Shown piece by piece: positions 16,105 through 25,159 of a stretch of 64,000 bases of DNA. Within the stretch, counting starts at the first letter, position 1; each line of letters starts with the position of its first letter. Under the pieces are notes generated by a model. That model saw only the letters and a program-made list of their open reading frames with translations, made no database searches and was not told where the DNA came from. This DNA is from Epithemia pelagica (Eukaryota; Protista; Bacillariophyta): positions 1,116,001-1,180,000 of the forward strand of contig OX337242.1 in NCBI GenBank assembly GCA_946965045.2, written 5' to 3'. The position numbers and the translations under genes were made by a program.

Positions 16105-19100
16105 ATGAAATTCAGTCGGGCTGCGCTATCGTTCTTCTTGTGGGGTGCTCACAATCAGCATCCCATTCGTGCCTTTACGACCATGATCAACCACCAACAA
16201 CGTTCGTCGTCTCTTCCCAAACATGGCGGATCGCTCTTTCAAGCAATTTCGACGTCTACTTCACCAAGCTCTGCCAAACCGAAACGCATTCCATTTTACC
16301 TGGACAAATCCTTAGCGGCAGTTACGACGCCCACTGCCCTGAGCCTTGCCGTCTCCTCGTCGTCGACCGGACCCTTGGCCTCGTCTCGTTGGTGTTCGAT
16401 TCGGGGAGGCAGTGCGAACGGTGATCGAAGTCTCAGTACCAGTACTGCCCTCAAATCTGCGACTGTGGAAGAAACCAAAACCGAGGATGCTCCTGTGGAA
16501 ATCTTTCGCAAGGACTATACACCACTGCCATTCACAGTGTCGACCATTCGATTGGATTTTGACATTTACGAAGGCCGGACGGTCGTAACTACCGAGATGA
16601 AACTTGTCTCGAATCCAAACTTCTCTTCTGAAAGTGGGTCCGGAGAACTTGTGTTGGATGGTGATGAAACGTGCGTGACACTCAAGAGTCTCTCCATGGA
16701 TGGAGTGGATCTAAAGGAGGGAACGGATTACACCTTGAGTCCAGGCAAGTTGACCCTTCTTGCACCCAAAGACGGCGCATGGATTAAGAGTGTCGTGGAA
16801 ATTGTCCCAGAAGAGAATACTCAGTTGAGTGGTTTGTATCGTGCATCCACAAGTCCCATGTACTGTACCCAGTGCGAGGCCATGGGCTTTCGACGCATCA
16901 CCTATTTCCCGGATCGTCCCGATAACATGAGTACCTATGAACGCGTCCAGTTGACAGCGAATGCCGAAAACTTTCCAGTGCTCTTGTCCAATGGCAATCT
17001 CGTGGATAAGGGTGTCTCCCCAGACGACGACAGTCGTCACTATGCTGTGTGGAGTGATCCGTTTCCCAAACCATCCTACTTGTTTGCCGCTGTTGCTGGT
17101 AACTTGAAGAGTATTCAAGATGAGTATGTGACAACCTCGGGAAACAAGGTTCATTTGGAAATTTATTCGGAACCCAATGCCGTTCACAAGCTTCAATATG
17201 CCATGGATTCCTTGAAACGAAGTATGAAATGGGATGAAGACCGATTCGGATTGGAATACGATTTGGGCATGTACAATATTGTTGCCACATCGGATTTCAA
17301 TATGGGAGCCATGGAAAACAAGGGTCTCAATGTCTTCAACACAGCCTACGTTTTGGCCGATCAAAAGACTGCTACTGATGTTGACTTTGAACGTGTGGAA
17401 GGAGTGATTGGACATGAAGTAAGTGAAGGATCGTTGATATGCTGTGCCTTTTGTTTTCATACTACAGCGTTCACCATTGTCTGACCATGTTGCTTTCTCT
17501 GCTCAAATTTTTGTGCCGCCCGTTTTATTCTCCAGTATTTCCACAATTGGACGGGGAACCGCGTGACTTGTCGAGATTGGTTCCAACTCACCTTGAAAGA
17601 AGGTTTGACAGTATTCCGGGACCAAGAGTTCTCAGGGGATATGAATTCGAAACCGGTCAAGCGTATTGAAGGTGTTCGTGGATTGCGCGGACGTCAGTTC
17701 AATGAGGACGCTGGACCCATGTCGCACCCAATTCGTCCGGACTCGTATATTTCGATGGACAACTTTTACACCGCCACGGTGTACGAAAAGGGAGCTGAAA
17801 TTATTCGCATGTACCAGACCATCCTTGGTGTCGAAGGCTTCAACAAGGGAATGAAGCTTTACTTTGAACGCCATGATGGAACTGGTGTAACGTGCGATGA
17901 CTTTTTGTCTGCCATGGCCGACGCCAATGATGTTGATTTGTCTCAATTCGCGCTTTGGTACAGCACGGCTGGTACTCCTACGGTCACGTATTCCACCGAG
18001 TACAGCGATGGAGCGTTCAAGTTGACTCTCTCCCAAAAGAGTAACAGTGAGTCTCCGATGCACATTCCCATTTCCTTTGGTCTTCTTGACAAAGCCAGTG
18101 GCGAAGAAGTGGTACCCACTACTGTCTTGGACTTGAAGCAAAATAGTCAAACATTCACTTTTGATGGCCTCAAGAAAGATGTTGTACCCTCTCTTTTGCG
18201 AGAGTTCTCGGCCCCTATCAAGCTTGTTCCAGAGTCGGGTGATGTGGACGAAGAGTCGTTGGCATTTTTGGCCGCCCGTGATACGGATGGATTTAACCGT
18301 TGGGAGTCGGGGCAAAAGCTATTCTCCTCGCTTATTTTCCAAACTTTGGAAGACAGTGTGTCTGAAAAGACTACGGAGTACGCGTATGAAGCCTTTGGAC
18401 GAGCCTTGGCGGATAAGGAGACAACCGACTTTTCAATCCAGGCCTACACCATGATTTTGCCTTCAGAAAGTACTTTGGCGGAGGAAATGGATGTCATTGA
18501 TCCGATTGGTCTCCACAAAGCACGAGGAACGGTGAAGAAAGCGCTGGCGCGAAAATACTACGATCAGCTTCTGGAACGATACAACGAACTGACCGCTCTC
18601 ATGGACGAAGACGAGGAATTTAAGGTCGATTCTACATCCATTGGACAACGTCGTCTCCGCAATGTGTTCCTGGATTATTTGTGCTCCATCAAGGAGACCC
18701 CTGAGGAGCAAGTTGCAGCCGCAAAGTTGGCAATGGACCATTTCAGCTCTGCCAAGGGTATGACTGATAAGATGGCAGCGTTGACGGCCTTAACTTCGAT
18801 GGATGGTGAAGGAAGCGGATCACGAGATGAAGCTATTGAACAATTCTACAAAGACGCAGATGGAGATGCTCTTGTGCTGAACAAGTGGTTTGCCAGCCAA
18901 TCGCTTGCCGATTTACCTGACGTCTTGGATCGCGTAAAGAAATTGACAGAGCATCCTGACTTCACTCTGAAAAACCCAAATCGTCTACGATCTTTGGTCG
19001 GCGCTTTTACAATGAATTCTGCAGCATTCCATGATGAATCTGGTGCCGGGTACGAGTTCATTGGAGATATGCTTGTCAAGGTCGATGCTCTCAACCCGCA

Positions 19101-19251
19101 AGTGAGCAGTCGTCTTGCTGGATGCCTCATCCAATGGCGTCGATACGACGAAGCACGCGGAAAGTTGATGAAAGCTCAACTCGAAAAACTGGCATCATTG
19201 AAACTCAGCGACGACCTCTTTGAAGTTGTCAATAGGGGCCTCAAAAACTAG
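16105..19251 (+). CDS. pepN: Aminopeptidase N (M1 family, bacterial PepN type), probable plastid presequence; intron 17419-17535
   Basis: Motifs TQCEAMGFRRIT, GAMENKGLN, spliced GHE|YFHNWTGNRVTCRDWFQLTLKEG (HEXXH...E), NFYTATVYEKGAE and NPNRLRSLVGAF. Confidence 0.97.
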
Positions 19252-19502
19252 CTATTAACTTTATAGAAAGTGCTATGATAGTCTTGATTGGAGCAATTCT
19301 ATCCAACTTAGATGTGTGCATGAAACGTGATCTATTTGCAGTTGACTTCGGTTGAACCATTGACGGCGTAAACGGGCAATCTCAACCCTTCTGTGTACAT
19401 CACTTTTGTCGGTGGATTTCCGTCTCCCCATTGAACTGATCGGATTTCACTCCTACTGATTTTTTCCAAAACCAAGAAGTGTTCTTTTCGCAGTAGCGTA
19501 GC

Positions 19503-22500
19503 TTAATTGGACGAAAGGGTTTCTTGCAGCTCTTGTATTACTTCACTCGCTTCCATACCATCTTTAACCAATCCACCTCCGACGATACAACCAGATGCTC
19601 CCGCCGCTTTGAGCTCCTTGAGATAAGCATCAACACCCGATTCGCTATCTGCGTTATCAGTTCTCTCAATCATTCCGACTCTTCCTTCCACCAGAACAGG
19701 AATATCCGAACCATGGATATTTCTTACTTCTGCCAAAGCTTCACTGCGAAGCAAATTTAATGCTTGCTCTCCAGATTCATCAAAAGAGAAATCTTCCATA
19801 TCCCTATTCGAAACCACTACCGCGGCGATGCTTCCGGGTGGAAGATCCACCAAGGAACGGAGCTGGACTTCCGAGTTTACACAAGCCAGTGTCTGTACTT
19901 TCAGACTTGATGCAATCTTGATCAGGTAGGTGAGATCTTTCTTAGGTAGGGCCCCAACAACCAGATTCACTGCATCAGCACCTGCAAGTCTCAGTTTGTA
20001 AAGCTGGTATGGGTACAACAGTAAGTCAGAAGCAAGGATGGGTGGGACTACTACGCCATCTTCTTCTGAAATTTTTTCAATCGAGGCCGTCGACGCAGCT
20101 TCTCTGGCCTTGGAAATATCTTCCATTGAGCCACCGAACAAGATACCGTCACAATTGACGCTAATCACTGGGACGTCTGTTATTGTAAAGGATTTAACAA
20201 GCTTCTCAACATCATACCGACGCCACAAACTTCCAATTGATGGTTCCATCCTTTTGCATTCAGGTATAACAACAAATCCATTCTCCGCAATGGCCCGTTT
20301 CAAAGGACCCACAAAATCTCTTGGTTTCGGGGAATTCGGGTCAGCTGCCGATAATCGGCACTGGGACAGCAAATTGGCAAGAGGTACACGTTCACGAAAC
20401 CGATCTACTTCGGTCTCCTTCTCCCACATAAAGCCTTCCAACACACTGGTGGGAGTGGCAGTTTTCTCCGCCACACTCCACTCTACTGTGGATACAGTCA
20501 TTGCGCGACCAGAGTGCACCTCACGGCGTTTCAAGATCAATTCGCCGTCCTCGGACCGCGGGGCCTTGGCTTCCAGTTCCTGTGGGGCTGTGGCACGTTG
20601 ACGTCGCTTAATGTCCTCCGCCTCGAGAAATTCTTGAGCTCGTCGTTCCAAGGCTTCCTGTTCTGCCTGGGCAGCTTTCTCGGCCGCCGCGGCAGCCGCC
20701 GAATACACAGGCCGGTCAGACTTGCTCGACAGCAAGAAGTACCCCGAAGCACTCCCTTGTACACCAATGCTCGATTCTGGTTCGACGTCCAGTTTCCCAA
20801 TGATGCCGTTGCCGAAAAAGCCAACAATACAGGGAACGGATGGCATCATACGTGCCGCAGCTTCCGATTCGAAACCACTCTTGCCCATGAAGAATTTGCT
20901 ACCTCTGTCCAGTGTTGGTACAATGAAGCAACATGTAGGAGATGATGACACTTTCTCTCCTTTTCCAAATTGTTCGTTGAGAAGGCGCTTCTTGTAACCA
21001 AGCCACAAGGCCTCTACTTCCTTTTTAGCAAAGCCGGATTCGCGAACAAAGAATCTCATTCGTGTTCCAGACTGGATATCCACACTTCCCAGGGCAAACG
21101 TCACGCTACCATCCTTCATGCCACCCGAAGCAACTTGAAAGACCCGAAAACGGTGTCCGCCACCTTCGGCAAGTCGGGAGAGTTCGCTTGCAGTCCATCC
21201 AACACTCCCCGTTTGTTCCAATCCAATCAGAAGCTGTCTTCGCATAAATGCCTGGTCATCATCCGAAAGGGAGCGCATCAGGAAATTGGCTTCGGCCAGT
21301 GGAGGTTTCGGGATGCGAGCTTTGGCATAGGCTTGTGCCATGCGTGCTCGGGCGTCCATATTCTCGTCTTCCTCCTCCTCCTCCTCTTCTTCCTCATCTT
21401 CTAGATCCAACGCTGCCGTAGCTTCTTCATCCAATACGATTGCTTGGATGGAGGAATCCTCACTCTTTAGAACCCGATACACACCGCCCACCGGTTTGGC
21501 TCCCTGTGCAGTGAGGGTTTGGAGTTGAATGTCACCCTCCATGGCCACTCCAATGCATCCGTCTCCCAGTGTTACGGGTACTCCATGATTGGCGGAATAA
21601 CGATAGAGTTTGGCTCGACTCAAACTACTCACAGTCGACGAGATACCACCAAAGATTTGACTATAGATGCCAGAAAGTCAAGAGAATGAGTTACGAATGA
21701 AACTTGCCAATCATACGCACAGAGTCGCAACAAATAGAACAACACATACCTTCCGGGAAAGTAAAATGACAGTCCAAACAGTAAATCATCTACATCTGCT
21801 GAAAAGGCAGGACTGGGTAGCAACATAAACACGGGCCTCGATGGTTTCTCATTTTCGTTGGTCGGTGTTCCTTCGGCAAATCCTTCCAACCCCAATGGTC
21901 GTTTCCACTCCTTGGCTGGGAGCCGTCCTACATCATCGGGCAAGTCATCTTTGAGACAATCAAAGGTTCGCAAAGAAACATCTGGTAAGAGGGCCAAGGT
22001 GACGGATACCGATGGGATGCCTTCCAACTCCACCGTTTTGGTGGCCGTGGCCGAGACGGGTCCTTGCGATGACGTTGTTGTGGACGAGGCATCCGGAACG
22101 AGGACATTGCTACTACTACTAATACAACCAGCCACAGAACTTCCCACCAAATGCTCAATGGGGGCATACAGTTCCTGCGCGGCTTTCAAGACGGTGGGAA
22201 TCACCGTCGTGGCCGGTTGCGGAACACCGCCATCGTACAAGGAACTGACAGATACCATGGCCAAATCAATCCGGACCGAGTCCTTGCTTTCGCCGTCTCC
22301 GAGTGCCGGTAACCCTTGGACTGCCATTTCCACTGCTTCTCGTAAGGCATCCACGAGATTGGCTTGCGTGGAGTAACCGGAAGCAAAGACTTGAGGCTTG
22401 GCTTCGTCAGACGGCATGGCCTCGTCAGTGTCTTCTTCGTCCAAGATGCTGTCTTTGGTATTCGCGAGGCCAACCGAAACCCATCCATGTTGCCTTCTTG

Positions 22501-22672
22501 TTGTTGTTGTTCGTCTTCTTGTAACATCCAGTGTTGAGGGCACGGTGAGAAATGTTGCGGTAGGCACTTTTCGCAGTTGTTGTGTCGTTGTCGGGACAAA
22601 AGCACTCGTGGAACAGCCGACCCCCAACAAGAGGAGGCAAGGCAACAGCACCGCCACGGTAGACAATGTCAT
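19503..22672 (-). CDS. Plastid-targeted FIST_N/FIST_C domain protein fused to a C-terminal indole-3-glycerol-phosphate-synthase-like barrel with degenerate active site; intron 21661-21749
   Basis: Bipartite leader ends ...STSAFVP. FIST-like segments: LVGSSVAGCI, spliced YFPGS-QIFGGISS, GVAMEGDI, FFVRE, DRG, GFFGNG. IGPS-like segments: FRERVPL, PECKRMEPS, SVNCD..FGGS.EDI, PILASDL..YPYQL...RLAGADAVNL, SNRDM. Confidence 0.85.
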
Positions 22673-23115: not shown

Positions 23116-25159
23116 TCACTCATCGGAAAGCGGATCGGATCCAGAGTCTTCTTCTTCTTCGCTCATTTCCAGCTTGTCATTGGATTCGATATCGGCAGCA
23201 AACCGTAAGGAATTCATGGCTCTTCGTTTCTTGCTGACCCATTCACCAATGTCTTCGTCATCCCCATCCAACAAGAGCAACTCCCATCCTTCCAAAAAGC
23301 GGGGCAACAAGTAGAGACGACCGGGAATACACAGCAAGGTCATGAAGGGAAAGACAATGGAAATGGCTGGCATGTTTTGCACGAAAAAGACCAATCCAAA
23401 AAAGACCAATTGCAACACCGTATACAAGTGAACCTTGGGCTTGTCCATGTACCGGTTAAAGACAGTATCAGGATATCGACTGGGCTGTTGCAACCGCAAT
23501 AAGATGCGGTTCCAGAATTGCATGGCAGGCAGAGCGGAAAGACCCATGAACAAAAAGACACCGTACAACACAGGCATGGGCAAGAGTTGCAACACCTTGA
23601 GGACCAAGAGGGACAAACCGACCATGAGGTGCGAAAAGAACATGGTCAATCGAGTTTCCTGGACGGAGATGATCTTGCCGTCCTTGTCCTTTTCGGCCAA
23701 ACTGTTGAGATGGATAATGCAGGGAACCGTGGTGGCGACCAACCAGGGAAGTCCAAGGCATCCATTGACAAAGTTGAAGAGACCACTCAAGCACAAATCA
23801 TAGTTGTATGCTTCGCCGTGTTTCAAGTTGTGACTTTTGTGGTTGATCAAATGCCAGGTAATTCTATAACACAGGGGAAAACACAAGAGCAGCAGCACAC
23901 ATGTGAGTGATGGGAGACTTGCACGGTTCCACCGAGCTCTCTGCTTGTGTGAACGTACCCATTGTCGAGGAAACAAAGCAAAAAGGCACCGAGAGCAGGG
24001 GCAGCAGTCACAATAGGAACCCATCCCTTGCCGTTCAAATCGGAGAAATCGACAAACCAGGAACGAGCACCGGCTACTTCGGCCTGATCGGGACAGTCGT
24101 CCGGAAAGAAGGTGAGACAAGTACTGTCACAGCACTGGTACGTCGGTTCAAAGCGGTCTGGGACGTTGAGCTGTTCTGTTTCAATGCTGGGGAACAAGAA
24201 CTCTTTGACCACGGTTGCAATCAAGACCGAAAGGGTCACGGCAAAGTCATGGATCGAGGTACGGACACCTTGGTTGCAAAAGAAGGAAGAAGTCTTGAAG
24301 CTTCGGAAAAAGAAGATGAGAGCTGTTGTACCGAAACCGAGAAGCGTACTCAACAAGGCCACTTCGAGGTAGTTGTTATCTTCATCGTCGATGTAATCTT
24401 CGTGTGACTTGTGGTTGGGGTCAAAGTATCGCAAGATACCAACTTGGGAGAATGGATCACCCACCGCATCCAACACAAAGATACTGACAATCAAGAGGGC
24501 AAAAATCTCGTCCGTGAATCGAGTGGCCAGACGTACGACGCGAGTCAAGTCAAAGAAACCGGCCATGACACAGTAGAACAGGAGCCAGCATGACGTCCAG
24601 GCATTGAAGGTCAAGTAAGGGACGTCAATACTGTCGGCAATACGAATGACGGCCTTGGTAAAGGCAAGCACAGGTCCAGTGGAACCAATGATGCACTGCA
24701 ATCAAAAGACGTGTGCAACTTGTGTGTTAGAATGATTGATGACCAAAAGGCTACCCTCAACGACGTCGAACTTACCATGGGCATGCCTCCAATCATACTG
24801 TAAGCGACACCAACCCATGTCGTGGCCAAAATGGTTTCGACGGCTCCAATCCGATTATCCGTTTCCTTTCCGTACACGGCTCCAAAGGTGAGAGTGGGCG
24901 CAATGACGGAAATGAACATGAGCAAGGTGACGGCAATGGTCTTTTGGTTAAAGTTGGTAACCTCCTTGAACCAGTGGGTTCCGACAGTTCGCTTGAAATC
25001 GTTAATGATTCCGATACCCCATCCTTGGGCTTCGTCCATGTGCACCTGCCCGGCTCCTTCGACCAAGTCGGCGTTGGAGACAGGGCCTCTGTTCTTCTCG
25101 ATCGAGGTTACAACCGTCTGGTCTTCCATGTTTTTCTGGTCCTTCGTGCTGTCCGTCAT
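23116..25159 (-). CDS. SLC4: SLC4-family bicarbonate/anion transporter; introns 24696-24775 and 23864-23958
   Basis: Motifs APTLTFG, GGMPM|CIIGSTGPVLAF, RFTDEIFALLI, FLDNG|ITWHLIN, GLPWLVATTVPCIIH, ETRLT and PVLYGVFLFMG. Both splices are in frame with canonical GT/AG. Confidence 0.95.

What the first reader, a model, noticed from the sequence alone, without database searches (positions are those of the whole stretch)
19503..22672. Plastid FIST-domain protein fused to a catalytically eroded IGPS (TrpC) barrel: candidate pseudo-enzyme sensor
Seen in sequence: a bipartite plastid leader (TSA-FVP), FIST_N/FIST_C-like regions, an Ala/Glu/Arg coiled linker and an IGPS-like TIM barrel. Compared with canonical IGPS motifs, ExK is kept (PECKR). 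The essential catalytic Lys of L(R/M)KDF is lost (LASDL), the Glu of LxEV is lost (LACV), GINxRDL reads VSNRDM and ESG reads EGR. Established knowledge: FIST domains are small-ligand sensory modules and include the heme/NO-binding NosP proteins; IGPS needs that Lys and Glu. Inference: a dead TrpC barrel that may still bind CdRP/IGP/indole-like ligands is coupled to a sensor domain, giving a possibly undescribed plastid signalling or regulatory protein for Trp or NO status.
Basis: partly seen in the sequence, partly recalled or inferred. Interest (0 to 1): 0.75.

Follow-up and report, generated by a model that had tools for sequence, protein, structure and literature searches.

The report
Plastid FIST protein with dead IGPS barrel
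This diatom gene encodes a plastid-targeted protein that joins a FIST sensor-type domain to a tryptophan-pathway (IGPS) barrel lacking its catalytic residues. The family is conserved, is mislabelled "IGPS" in databases, and includes the chromerid "IGPS-like" proteins that may be kin of the malaria apicoplast factor AMR1.

Summary
A two-exon gene on the minus strand (22672-21750, 21660-19503) encodes 1026 aa: signal peptide with an A|F cleavage motif, FIST_N/FIST_C, a helical linker and a full IGPS-fold barrel. A transcript-like public contig removes exactly the 89-nt GT..AG intron and spans both halves.

Against solved IGPS structures, the catalytic Lys110 is Ser, Glu159 is Cys and Asn180 is Ser. 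Glu51, Lys53, Arg182, Glu210 and the phosphate loops remain.

The fusion is not peculiar to this genome. It occurs in all diatoms sampled, including a non-photosynthetic Nitzschia, in other ochrophytes, and in the chromerids Vitrella and Chromera. None of 34 aligned members has Lys110 or Glu159, yet the barrel is the most constrained part of the protein.

By the literature, ochrophytes make IGP with a separate TrpC-TrpF fusion. Tang et al. 2019 already described "IGPS-like" proteins in Vitrella and Plasmodium AMR1, which failed to complement trpC. A 2007 paper, recalled from memory, noted the Phaeodactylum COG4398-InGPS fusion.

Verdict: a real, conserved, non-IGPS plastid protein and a new member of a known kind. 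Its ligand and role are unknown. Orthology to AMR1 could not be tested.

The parts
21750..22672 (-). Exon 1 (codons 1-307 plus 2 nt): start codon, bipartite targeting signal, first part of FIST_N
   Evidence: aligns without a break to ortholog P0002 across the junction
22601..22672 (-). Signal peptide, residues 1-24, ending STSA; Phe25 (22600-22598) follows the predicted cleavage site, then an S/T/R-rich transit-peptide-like stretch to about residue 65
   Evidence: A|F or G|F motif in orthologs from diatoms, Chrysoparadoxa, Mallomonas, Nannochloropsis, Vitrella and Chromera; the F/Y/W/L rule as summarised in PMC11528492
21661..21749 (-). Phase-2 intron, 89 nt, GT..AG
   Evidence: a contig of run X3 skips exactly these bases; Epithemia clementina has an intron at the same position and phase
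19503..21660 (-). Exon 2: rest of FIST_N, FIST_C, linker, IGPS-like barrel, stop codon 19505-19503
20664..22396 (-). FIST_N + FIST_C region, residues 93-640 (interrupted by the intron), with an acidic low-confidence insert (residues ~394-410, 21404-21350)
   Evidence: Pfam FIST_N 43.8 bits in ortholog P0002; AF2 pLDDT 86.7; best PDB match is the FBXO22 FIST domain, E 1.6e-13; best ESM Atlas match is a cyanobacterial stand-alone FIST protein, TM 0.91
20565..20663 (-). Ala/Glu/Arg-rich helical linker, residues 641-673
   Evidence: helix at the end of the FIST-region model
19506..20564 (-). IGPS-like (beta/alpha)8 barrel with a plant-type N-terminal extension, residues 674-1026
   Evidence: Pfam IGPS 74.4 bits; NCBIfam NF001372 132.9 bits against a cut-off of 370; AF2 pLDDT 89.2; Foldseek TM 0.83-0.90 by target to IGPS structures
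20028..20030 (-). Ser852 at the position of the catalytic Lys110 (LASDL in place of LRKDF)
   Evidence: no Lys here in 120 diatom orthologs or in 34 of 34 aligned fusions
19881..19883 (-). Cys901 at the position of Glu159 (LACV in place of LVEV)
19809..19811 (-). Ser925 at the position of Asn180; Arg927 (=Arg182) is kept at 19803-19805
20253..20261 (-). Glu775-Cys-Lys777, the retained Glu51-x-Lys53 motif

Best explanation
What it is (shown, about 0.9). This is a nuclear gene of a diatom close to Epithemia. It encodes a plastid-targeted protein of about 1026 aa with a cyanobacterial-type FIST_N/FIST_C module, a helical linker, and a barrel derived from plant-type (by my inference cyanobacterial-type) IGPS (TrpC). 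It belongs to an old family found in diatoms, other ochrophytes and chromerids. In every member examined the IGPS acid/base residues Lys110 and Glu159 are missing, so it is not the cell's IGPS. By the literature, that job is done in ochrophytes by a separate TrpC-TrpF fusion. The Vitrella member must be one of the 'IGPS-like' proteins of Tang et al. 2019.

How it most likely works (inferred, about 0.5). The barrel is a binding-competent but catalytically dead IGPS. It keeps the aromatic pocket (F/Y89), the carboxylate-binding Arg182, the hydroxyl-binding Glu210 and the phosphate loops. It therefore probably still holds a phosphorylated, possibly aryl-carboxylate, metabolite; CdRP or IGP-like ligands are candidates but are unproven. 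The FIST module adds a second ligand- or partner-binding surface. Together they would act in the stroma as a regulatory pseudoenzyme whose role concerns the plastid as such rather than photosynthesis, since a non-photosynthetic diatom keeps the gene.
For: - Gene model and single transcript.
- IGPS fold and loss of K110, E159 and N180.
- All NCBIfam TrpC equivalog cut-offs are missed by a wide margin.
- FIST by Pfam in orthologs and by fold (FBXO22; cyanobacterial FIST at TM 0.91).
- Family range: an exhaustive profile search plus source names give diatoms, Chrysoparadoxa, Mallomonas, Nannochloropsis/Microchloropsis, Vitrella and Chromera.
- Of 34 fusions, 34 lack K110 and E159, while 34 keep F/Y89, 31 keep R182 and 31 keep E210.
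- Purifying selection against Epithemia: pN is 0.089 in the barrel, 0.116 in FIST and 0.58 in the presequence, with synonymous sites saturated.
- An A|F targeting motif is present family-wide.
- Non-photosynthetic Nitzschia sp. Nitz4 keeps a full-length copy; its trophic status is from bioRxiv 10.1101/2020.05.28.115543.
- A separate canonical TrpC-TrpF exists in ochrophytes: PMC3942023, PMC3499364 Fig. S5E, PMC11528492.
- Vitrella IGPS-like genes did not complement E. coli trpC: PMC6380595.
Against: - There is no biochemical, localisation or genetic evidence for any member outside Tang et al.'s negative complementation, and its authors note that protein expression was not detected.
- In diatoms E51, K53, R182 and E210 are invariant, so residual or altered catalysis cannot be excluded.
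- Outside diatoms E51 and K53 vary, which weakens CdRP or IGP as a family-wide ligand.
- The protein has no recognisable output domain, so 'sensor' has no defined read-out.
- I could not confirm with the tools that this genome itself carries a TrpC-TrpF gene; that rests on the literature only.
- No targeting predictor was run.
- The public transcript contig ends at 22670, inside the proposed ATG, so the 5' end is not independently fixed.
Confidence: 0.55

Rival explanations
1. It is a neofunctionalised enzyme. The barrel catalyses a different reaction on a phosphorylated substrate, using retained residues such as Asp111 and Glu210 (plus Glu51 and Lys53 in diatoms), and FIST acts as its allosteric regulator. 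Tang et al. proposed this for AMR1.
For: The barrel is under very strong constraint (pN 0.089). Pocket residues are invariant within diatoms. D111 is kept in 34 of 34 members and E210 in 31 of 34. Tang et al. propose a new biochemical function for AMR1. AMR1 loss perturbs MEP-pathway intermediates (PMC8022201).
Against: The positions of the lost catalytic residues hold variable, chemically unrelated residues (S/D/A/N/M and V/S/T/C/K/A). There is no family-wide replacement acid/base pair. E51 and K53 are not conserved outside diatoms. No candidate substrate is known.
Confidence: 0.3
2. [quoted passage not shown]
For: Pfam IGPS is above threshold. JGI, UniRef and NCBI name it IGPS. E51, K53, R182 and E210 are kept in diatoms.
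Against: K110, E159 and N180 are lost in all members, and the Lys is essential for TrpC activity (Darimont 1998, as cited in PMC11528492). NCBIfam equivalog scores are far below their cut-offs. Ochrophytes have a separate TrpC-TrpF. Vitrella IGPS-like genes did not rescue trpC.
Confidence: 0.04
3. The FIST half is a NosP-like haem/NO sensor, and the protein reports NO or haem status in the plastid.
For: FIST-FIST_C proteins include NosP (NO) and CdpA (haem), according to the review PMC8846402.
Against: The same review says the binding mechanism is unknown. No His or Cys is conserved across the family's FIST region. The nearest structural relatives are stand-alone cyanobacterial FIST proteins of unknown function and FBXO22, which binds proteins. 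No kinase partner is evident.
Confidence: 0.08
4. It is a gene-model artefact: two adjacent genes (FIST and IGPS-like) wrongly joined.
For: Some automatic calls split it, for example P0001 (709 aa) and P0003 (766 aa), with a separate upstream ORF in L002.
Against: One contig in run X3 covers both halves with the intron removed. More than 100 full-length fusions, including transcriptome-derived ones, come from many lineages. The intron position is conserved.
Confidence: 0.01

Closest known systems
'IGPS-like' proteins of chromerids and apicomplexans, including PfAMR1 (PF3D7_1363700); Tang et al. 2019, PMC6380595
   Same: Both are IGPS-homologous TIM barrels with key catalytic residues lost and long non-barrel extensions, carry a signal peptide or plastid leader, and coexist with a canonical IGPS in Vitrella. 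The IGPS-like genes did not rescue trpC. The Vitrella protein CEM12188.1 (P0176) is a full-length family member scoring 347 bits against the diatom profile.
   Different: That paper does not mention FIST or ochrophyte members (0 occurrences of 'FIST'). Whether PfAMR1 (790 aa) belongs to the FIST-bearing lineage or to the second Vitrella paralog was not testable here. AMR1 has a knock-down phenotype; the diatom protein has no functional data.
Canonical IGPS / TrpC (EC 4.1.1.48), e.g. PDB 6y88, 3t44, 1igs; plant-type subfamily NF001372
   Same: The fold is the same (TM 0.83-0.90 by target). E51, K53, R182, E210, the GADA motif and the phosphate loops are kept. The N-terminal extension aligns with plant IGPS.
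   Different: K110 is Ser, E159 is Cys, N180 is Ser and S211 is Gly. It is fused behind a ~550-aa FIST module. It scores 133 bits against a 370-bit cut-off.
Stand-alone FIST_N/FIST_C proteins (COG4398-type) of cyanobacteria and algae
   Same: The N half superposes on a 418-aa cyanobacterial FIST protein over 418 residues (rmsd 2.7, TM 0.91 by that row). Algae also have stand-alone FIST proteins.
   Different: Here the module carries an acidic insert and is fused to a barrel. The function of the stand-alone proteins is unknown.
Phaeodactylum 'InGPS fused to COG4398' (Jiroutova et al. 2007, J Mol Evol 65:496; recalled from memory, paper not held)
   Same: It is the same gene family: P0021 is the Phaeodactylum ortholog, 59% identical.
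   Different: As I recall it, that paper treated it as the pathway's InGPS. The residue losses and the separate TrpC-TrpF argue otherwise. No held paper contains 'COG4398'.
TrpC-TrpF pseudoenzyme of Leucomyxa plasmidifera (PMC11528492)
   Same: It is an ochrophyte plastid protein with a TrpC domain whose essential Lys is mutated, and its authors interpret it as a pseudoenzyme.
   Different: It derives from the canonical TrpC-TrpF fusion in a Trp auxotroph. It is not the FIST lineage and represents an independent loss.
FBXO22 (human F-box protein with a FIST domain; PDB 8ua3, 8s7d)
   Same: It is the only solved FIST fold and the top PDB match (E 1.6e-13). The FIST_C motif aligns by sequence.
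   Different: FBXO22 is a ubiquitin-ligase substrate receptor. It has no barrel and is about 12% identical.

Membership tests
Canonical IGPS (TrpC, EC 4.1.1.48) | (beta/alpha)8 barrel of the IGPS family (Pfam PF00218 above its gathering score; IGPS fold) | tested here: met
   74.4 bits against 27; Foldseek E 7e-17, TM by target 0.83-0.90
Canonical IGPS (TrpC, EC 4.1.1.48) | Catalytic general acid Lys110 (LRKDF motif) | tested here: not met
   Ser852 in the window; no Lys in 120 diatom orthologs or in 34 of 34 aligned fusions
Canonical IGPS (TrpC, EC 4.1.1.48) | Glu159 (LxEVH) and Asn180 (GINNRDL) | tested here: not met
   Cys901 and Ser925. E159 is absent in 34 of 34 members; N180 is Ser in 23 of 23 diatoms
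Canonical IGPS (TrpC, EC 4.1.1.48) | Glu51-x-Lys53, Arg182, Glu210 and the phosphate-binding loops | tested here: met
   Kept in the window and in diatoms; E51 and K53 vary in other lineages
Canonical IGPS (TrpC, EC 4.1.1.48) | NCBIfam TrpC equivalog or subfamily score above its cut-off | tested here: not met
   Best is 132.9 against 370 (NF001372); all 13 models fall below their cut-offs
Canonical IGPS (TrpC, EC 4.1.1.48) | IGPS activity or trpC complementation | not testable with these tools
   Reported negative, with caveats, for the Vitrella IGPS-like genes (PMC6380595)
FIST domain proteins (PF08495 + PF10442) | FIST_N profile match above its gathering score | tested here: met
   Orthologs score 43.8 (P0002), 49.8 (Vitrella) and 45.2 (Skeletonema) against 23.2. 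The window's own exon-2 piece alone scores 22.1 because the intron splits the domain
FIST domain proteins (PF08495 + PF10442) | FIST_C profile match above its gathering score | tested here: inconclusive
   Diatoms score 14-26.9 against 28.5; Vitrella scores 31.1 and P0159 scores 33.0, both above it. The FIST_C motif aligns to FBXO22 at E 3e-4
FIST domain proteins (PF08495 + PF10442) | FIST fold | tested here: met
   FBXO22 at E 1.6e-13, probability 1.00; cyanobacterial FIST at TM 0.91 over 418 residues
IGPS-like / AMR1 family (Tang et al. 2019) | IGPS-homologous barrel lacking catalytic residues, alongside a separate canonical IGPS | tested here: met
   Residue table. The canonical TrpC-TrpF rests on the literature only
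IGPS-like / AMR1 family (Tang et al. 2019) | Orthology to a Vitrella IGPS-like protein | tested here: met
   P0176 (CEM12188.1) matches the diatom profile end to end (positions 62-978, 347 bits) and has FIST_N, FIST_C and IGPS all above threshold. That it is one of Tang's two proteins is an inference from its residues
IGPS-like / AMR1 family (Tang et al. 2019) | Orthology to apicomplexan AMR1 itself | not tested
   No AMR1 sequence could be obtained: the word search found 2 hits and the Atlas searches gave no apicomplexan cluster
IGPS-like / AMR1 family (Tang et al. 2019) | Required for plastid biogenesis | not testable with these tools
   Needs genetics in a diatom
NosP-type haem/NO sensors | Haem binding, NO response, partner kinase | not testable with these tools
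   No family-wide conserved His or Cys in the FIST part; the review notes that the mechanism is unknown
Ochrophyte stromal proteins with a bipartite targeting signal | Signal peptide followed by F/Y/W/L at +1 and a transit-peptide-like region | tested here: met
   By inspection only: STSA|FVP in the window and A|F or G|F in orthologs; the rule is as in PMC11528492. No predictor was run

The most novel reading that the evidence does not exclude
The FIST-IGPS-like fusion is the free-living-alga counterpart of apicomplexan AMR1. On this reading AMR1's unexplained N-terminal extension is a degenerate FIST module, and the family is an ancient factor of red-derived complex plastids. It would bind a shikimate- or Trp-branch-like phospho-metabolite and be needed to maintain the organelle, whether photosynthetic or not. 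Genetically tractable Phaeodactylum would then offer a direct route to the unknown biochemical function of an essential malaria apicoplast protein.
Probability: 0.35. Interest if true: 0.7.

Novelty: new member of a known kind. Interest (0 to 1): 0.45.

Why it matters
Public databases and pathway reconstructions label this protein as the diatom IGPS. The evidence here says it cannot be, so tryptophan-pathway maps for diatoms should use the TrpC-TrpF fusion instead.

The family also links two literatures that do not cite each other in the papers I could search. One is the 'COG4398-InGPS fusion' of diatoms. The other is the 'IGPS-like' proteins of chromerids and apicomplexans, one of which (AMR1) is essential for the malaria apicoplast and has no known biochemistry.

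Two facts suggest a general plastid role rather than a photosynthetic one: the N-terminal part is a FIST module, and a non-photosynthetic diatom keeps the gene. The family also gives tractable algal models (Phaeodactylum, Nannochloropsis) in which to find the ligand and the phenotype.

Tried and rejected
1. Bacterial loci. I looked for loci encoding FIST or IGPS relatives, to test for a cyanobacterial FIST-trpC neighbourhood. Alignments A3 and A4 had no stretch conserved enough to search with. A2's pattern hit 16 stretches, none confirmed. Nothing was learned.
2. Apicomplexan AMR1 sequences. A word search with the Vitrella barrel returned only itself and one diatom. Three ESM Atlas searches gave no apicomplexan cluster. 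AMR1 orthology therefore stays open.
3. Jiroutova 2007. The paper is not held and no held paper contains 'COG4398', so that statement rests on my memory of the abstract.
4. Earlier notes of this scan on a canonical trpC in this genome: none.
5. dN/dS against Epithemia. Synonymous sites are saturated (pS ~0.79), so only pN values and the bound dN/dS << 1 are reported.
6. Rejected readings. It is not the true IGPS, because catalytic residues are missing and a second IGPS exists. It is not a merged-gene artefact, because of the transcript contig and the orthologs. The weak Foldseek similarity of FIST to cyanuric-acid-hydrolase 'Toblerone' folds (TM 0.19-0.29) is too weak to use.
Full report
**1. 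What is in the sequence.**

ORF listing and translation show two long minus-strand ORFs that abut at about 21630-21750. Joining 22672-21750 to 21660-19503 removes an 89-nt GT..AG intron and gives one 1026-aa product. The intron is phase 2 and is not a multiple of three. Unspliced, the exon-1 frame stops at 21631-21629.

A contig of public run X3 lies on 19400-21660 and 21750-22670 and skips exactly the 89 bases. Runs X1 and X2, which have contigs of hundreds of kb, keep them. X3's library type is not on record, so I infer that it is cDNA from the clean removal of a GT..AG intron. Either way, one molecule covers both halves.

The spliced protein aligns without a break to the 1021-aa Epithemia clementina protein P0002, at 81% identity over 951 columns. 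That gene has an 83-nt intron at the same position and phase, and the same tail-to-tail aminopeptidase-N neighbour. By the X3 contig's end at 22670 and zero X3 depth beyond about 22675, the 5' end of the transcript is near the proposed ATG. The ATG itself is not independently confirmed.

**2. Domains.**

Pfam finds IGPS at 74.4 bits on the exon-2 product and the last quarter of FIST_N at 22.1 bits, just under the 23.2 cut-off because the intron splits the domain. On intact orthologs FIST_N scores 41-50 bits. FIST_C is sub-threshold in diatoms but above threshold in Vitrella (31.1) and P0159 (33.0).

AlphaFold2 models built on family alignments are confident: pLDDT 89.2 for the barrel and 86.7 for the N half. 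The barrel's best PDB matches are all IGPS structures, with TM by target 0.83-0.90. The N half's best matches are the four FBXO22 FIST chains (E 1.6e-13 to 3e-9). In the ESM Atlas its best match is a 418-aa stand-alone FIST protein of cyanobacteria, aligned over all 418 residues at rmsd 2.7 and TM 0.91.

The stretch just before the barrel (GELILKRREV...VEWSV) aligns with the N-terminal extension of plant IGPS. It is also covered by the best NCBIfam model, NF001372, over positions 5-291 of 295. From my own knowledge of cyanobacterial TrpC N-termini, I read the barrel as the cyanobacterial/plastid type; no cyanobacterial TrpC was aligned here.

**3. Catalytic residues.**

I aligned the protein by phmmer and by family profile to M. 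tuberculosis, Brucella and P. aeruginosa IGPS, and by MAFFT to a plant IGPS.

| IGPS position | Window residue | State |
|---|---|---|
| E51 | E775 | kept |
| K53 | K777 | kept |
| K110 | S852 | lost |
| E159 | C901 | lost |
| N180 | S925 | lost |
| R182 | R927 | kept |
| E210 | E966 | kept |
| S211 | G967 | lost |
| second phosphate loop | GGG | kept |

The Lys is essential for TrpC activity (Darimont et al. 1998, as cited in PMC11528492). Every NCBIfam TrpC model is missed by a wide margin; the best scores 133 bits against a cut-off of 370.

**4. The family.**

A word-indexed search returned 297 relatives. The top 120 were all diatom proteins, mostly of 900-1100 aa and mostly carrying FIST plus IGPS. 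Many are named 'indole-3-glycerol phosphate synthase' by JGI, UniRef or NCBI. None of the 120 has Lys at the K110 position; it is mostly Ser, sometimes Leu, Met, Ile, Asn or Gly.

An exhaustive profile search of 1.84 billion representatives, followed by cluster look-ups, extended the full-length fusion to other lineages:
- Chrysoparadoxa
- Mallomonas
- Nannochloropsis and Microchloropsis
- the chromerids Vitrella (CEM12188.1) and Chromera (Cvel_19631)
- the non-photosynthetic diatom Nitzschia sp. Nitz4 (its status is from bioRxiv 10.1101/2020.05.28.115543; the copy is intact)

In 34 aligned fusions:
- K110 and E159 are absent in all 34.
- S211 is Gly in all 34.
- D111 is kept in 34, F/Y89 in 34, R182 in 31 and E210 in 31.
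- E51 and K53 are invariant or nearly so in diatoms but vary elsewhere.

So the acid/base machinery was lost at or before the family's origin, while binding-type residues persisted.

Against Epithemia, the nonsynonymous difference is 0.089 per site in the barrel, 0.116 in FIST and 0.58 in the presequence. Synonymous sites are saturated at about 0.79. The 'dead' barrel is therefore the most constrained part of the protein.

Nearly all complete N-termini have a signal peptide followed by Phe. This is the ochrophyte rule for stromal import as summarised in PMC11528492.

**5. What is already known.**

Imanian and Keeling 2014 (PMC3942023) treat an InGPS-PRAI fusion as the diatom pathway enzyme. 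They list two IGPS homologs in Ectocarpus, and 'InGPS' in apicomplexans that lack the pathway. Nannochloropsis oceanica also has an IGPS-PAI fusion (PMC3499364, Fig. S5E), and Leucomyxa has a degenerate one (PMC11528492).

Tang et al. 2019 (PMC6380595) found that Vitrella has one canonical IGPS (Vbra_4894) and two 'IGPS-like' homologs with large extensions and non-conserved catalytic residues. PfAMR1 is of the same kind and is required for apicoplast biogenesis. None of the IGPS-like genes rescued E. coli trpC, with the caveat that protein was not detected. Since CEM12188.1 is an IGPS homolog of Vitrella without K110 and E159, it must be one of those two; this is an inference.

That paper never mentions FIST. 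No held paper contains both 'FIST domain' and 'indole-3-glycerol', and none links IGPS-like or AMR1 with Phaeodactylum or ochrophytes.

From memory, Jiroutova et al. 2007 reported that the Phaeodactylum InGPS is fused to a cyanobacterial COG4398 protein and treated it as the pathway enzyme. I could not read that paper.

PfAMR1 is 790 aa with a signal peptide and no conserved IGPS catalytic residues (PMC3637116). Its loss raises DOXP and MEP and disrupts isoprenoid biosynthesis (PMC8022201).

**6. How it most likely works.**

Shown:
- It is not an IGPS by residues.
- It is a conserved single polypeptide with a plastid-type leader.
- Both halves are under purifying selection.
- It is retained without photosynthesis.

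Inferred:
- The pattern of lost acid/base residues with a kept aromatic pocket, Arg182, Glu210 and phosphate loops is what one expects of a pseudoenzyme that still binds an IGPS-like ligand. Such a ligand would be a phosphorylated, perhaps aryl-carboxylate, metabolite.
- FIST modules are ligand- or partner-binding. NosP and CdpA are linked to NO and haem, and FBXO22 binds proteins.
- A two-module stromal regulator is therefore my preferred reading, at about 0.5.

The main rival is a new enzymatic activity, at about 0.3. It is favoured by the extreme conservation of the diatom pocket. It is disfavoured by the lack of any family-wide replacement catalytic residues.

**7. Verdict.**

The object is a new (diatom) member of a known kind, the IGPS-like pseudo-IGPS proteins. 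Two points are modest additions that I did not find in the searchable literature: the long N-terminal extension of the ochrophyte and chromerid members is a cyanobacterial-type FIST module, and the fusion spans ochrophytes and chromerids.

The open and more interesting question is whether apicomplexan AMR1 is a member of this fusion lineage. I could not test it.

Noticed in passing
window 17563-19251 (+): C-terminal two thirds of an M1 aminopeptidase (Peptidase_M1, DUF3458, DUF3458_C), lying tail-to-tail with the FIST-IGPS-like gene. Epithemia clementina (L001) and an ENA relative (L002) have the same neighbour in the same orientation.
   Followed up: partly
window 23116-24120 (-): ORF with an SLC4-type HCO3- transporter membrane domain (PF00955, 200 bits), upstream of the gene. 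It is probably one exon of a larger bicarbonate or anion transporter gene.
   Followed up: no
window 21350-21404 (-), residues ~394-410: Poly-Glu/Asp insert between FIST_N and FIST_C. It has low model confidence, varies in length among diatoms, and was flagged as a repeat by the read-laying tool (21358-21404).
   Followed up: no
window 22762: A contig of run X4 carries a 10-nt insertion (TGCGCATCGG) about 90 nt upstream of the start codon. Several single-base differences among runs X2-X4 also lie in 19943-22121. These are probably allelic or strain variation.
   Followed up: no
L002 2028-5301 (ENA relative), and P0001/P0003: Automatic gene calls split this gene at the intron into an upstream ORF and a 709-766-aa 'IGPS' protein, so database entries for several diatoms under-report the FIST half.
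   Followed up: partly
P0129 (Nitzschia sp. Nitz4): The non-photosynthetic diatom keeps a full-length but fast-evolving copy (38% identity to the window, against 55-65% for other diatoms) that still has a signal peptide followed by Phe.
   Followed up: partly
P0220 (Brassica cretica KAF2533817.1): This 511-aa plant protein contains two tandem IGPS barrels. It is probably a tandem-duplication or gene-model fusion, and was used here only as a canonical reference.
   Followed up: no
ESM Atlas clusters: Stand-alone FIST_N+FIST_C proteins of 436-500 aa form sizeable eukaryotic clusters in haptophytes, diatoms and chlorophytes, so algae have unfused FIST proteins as well.
   Followed up: no
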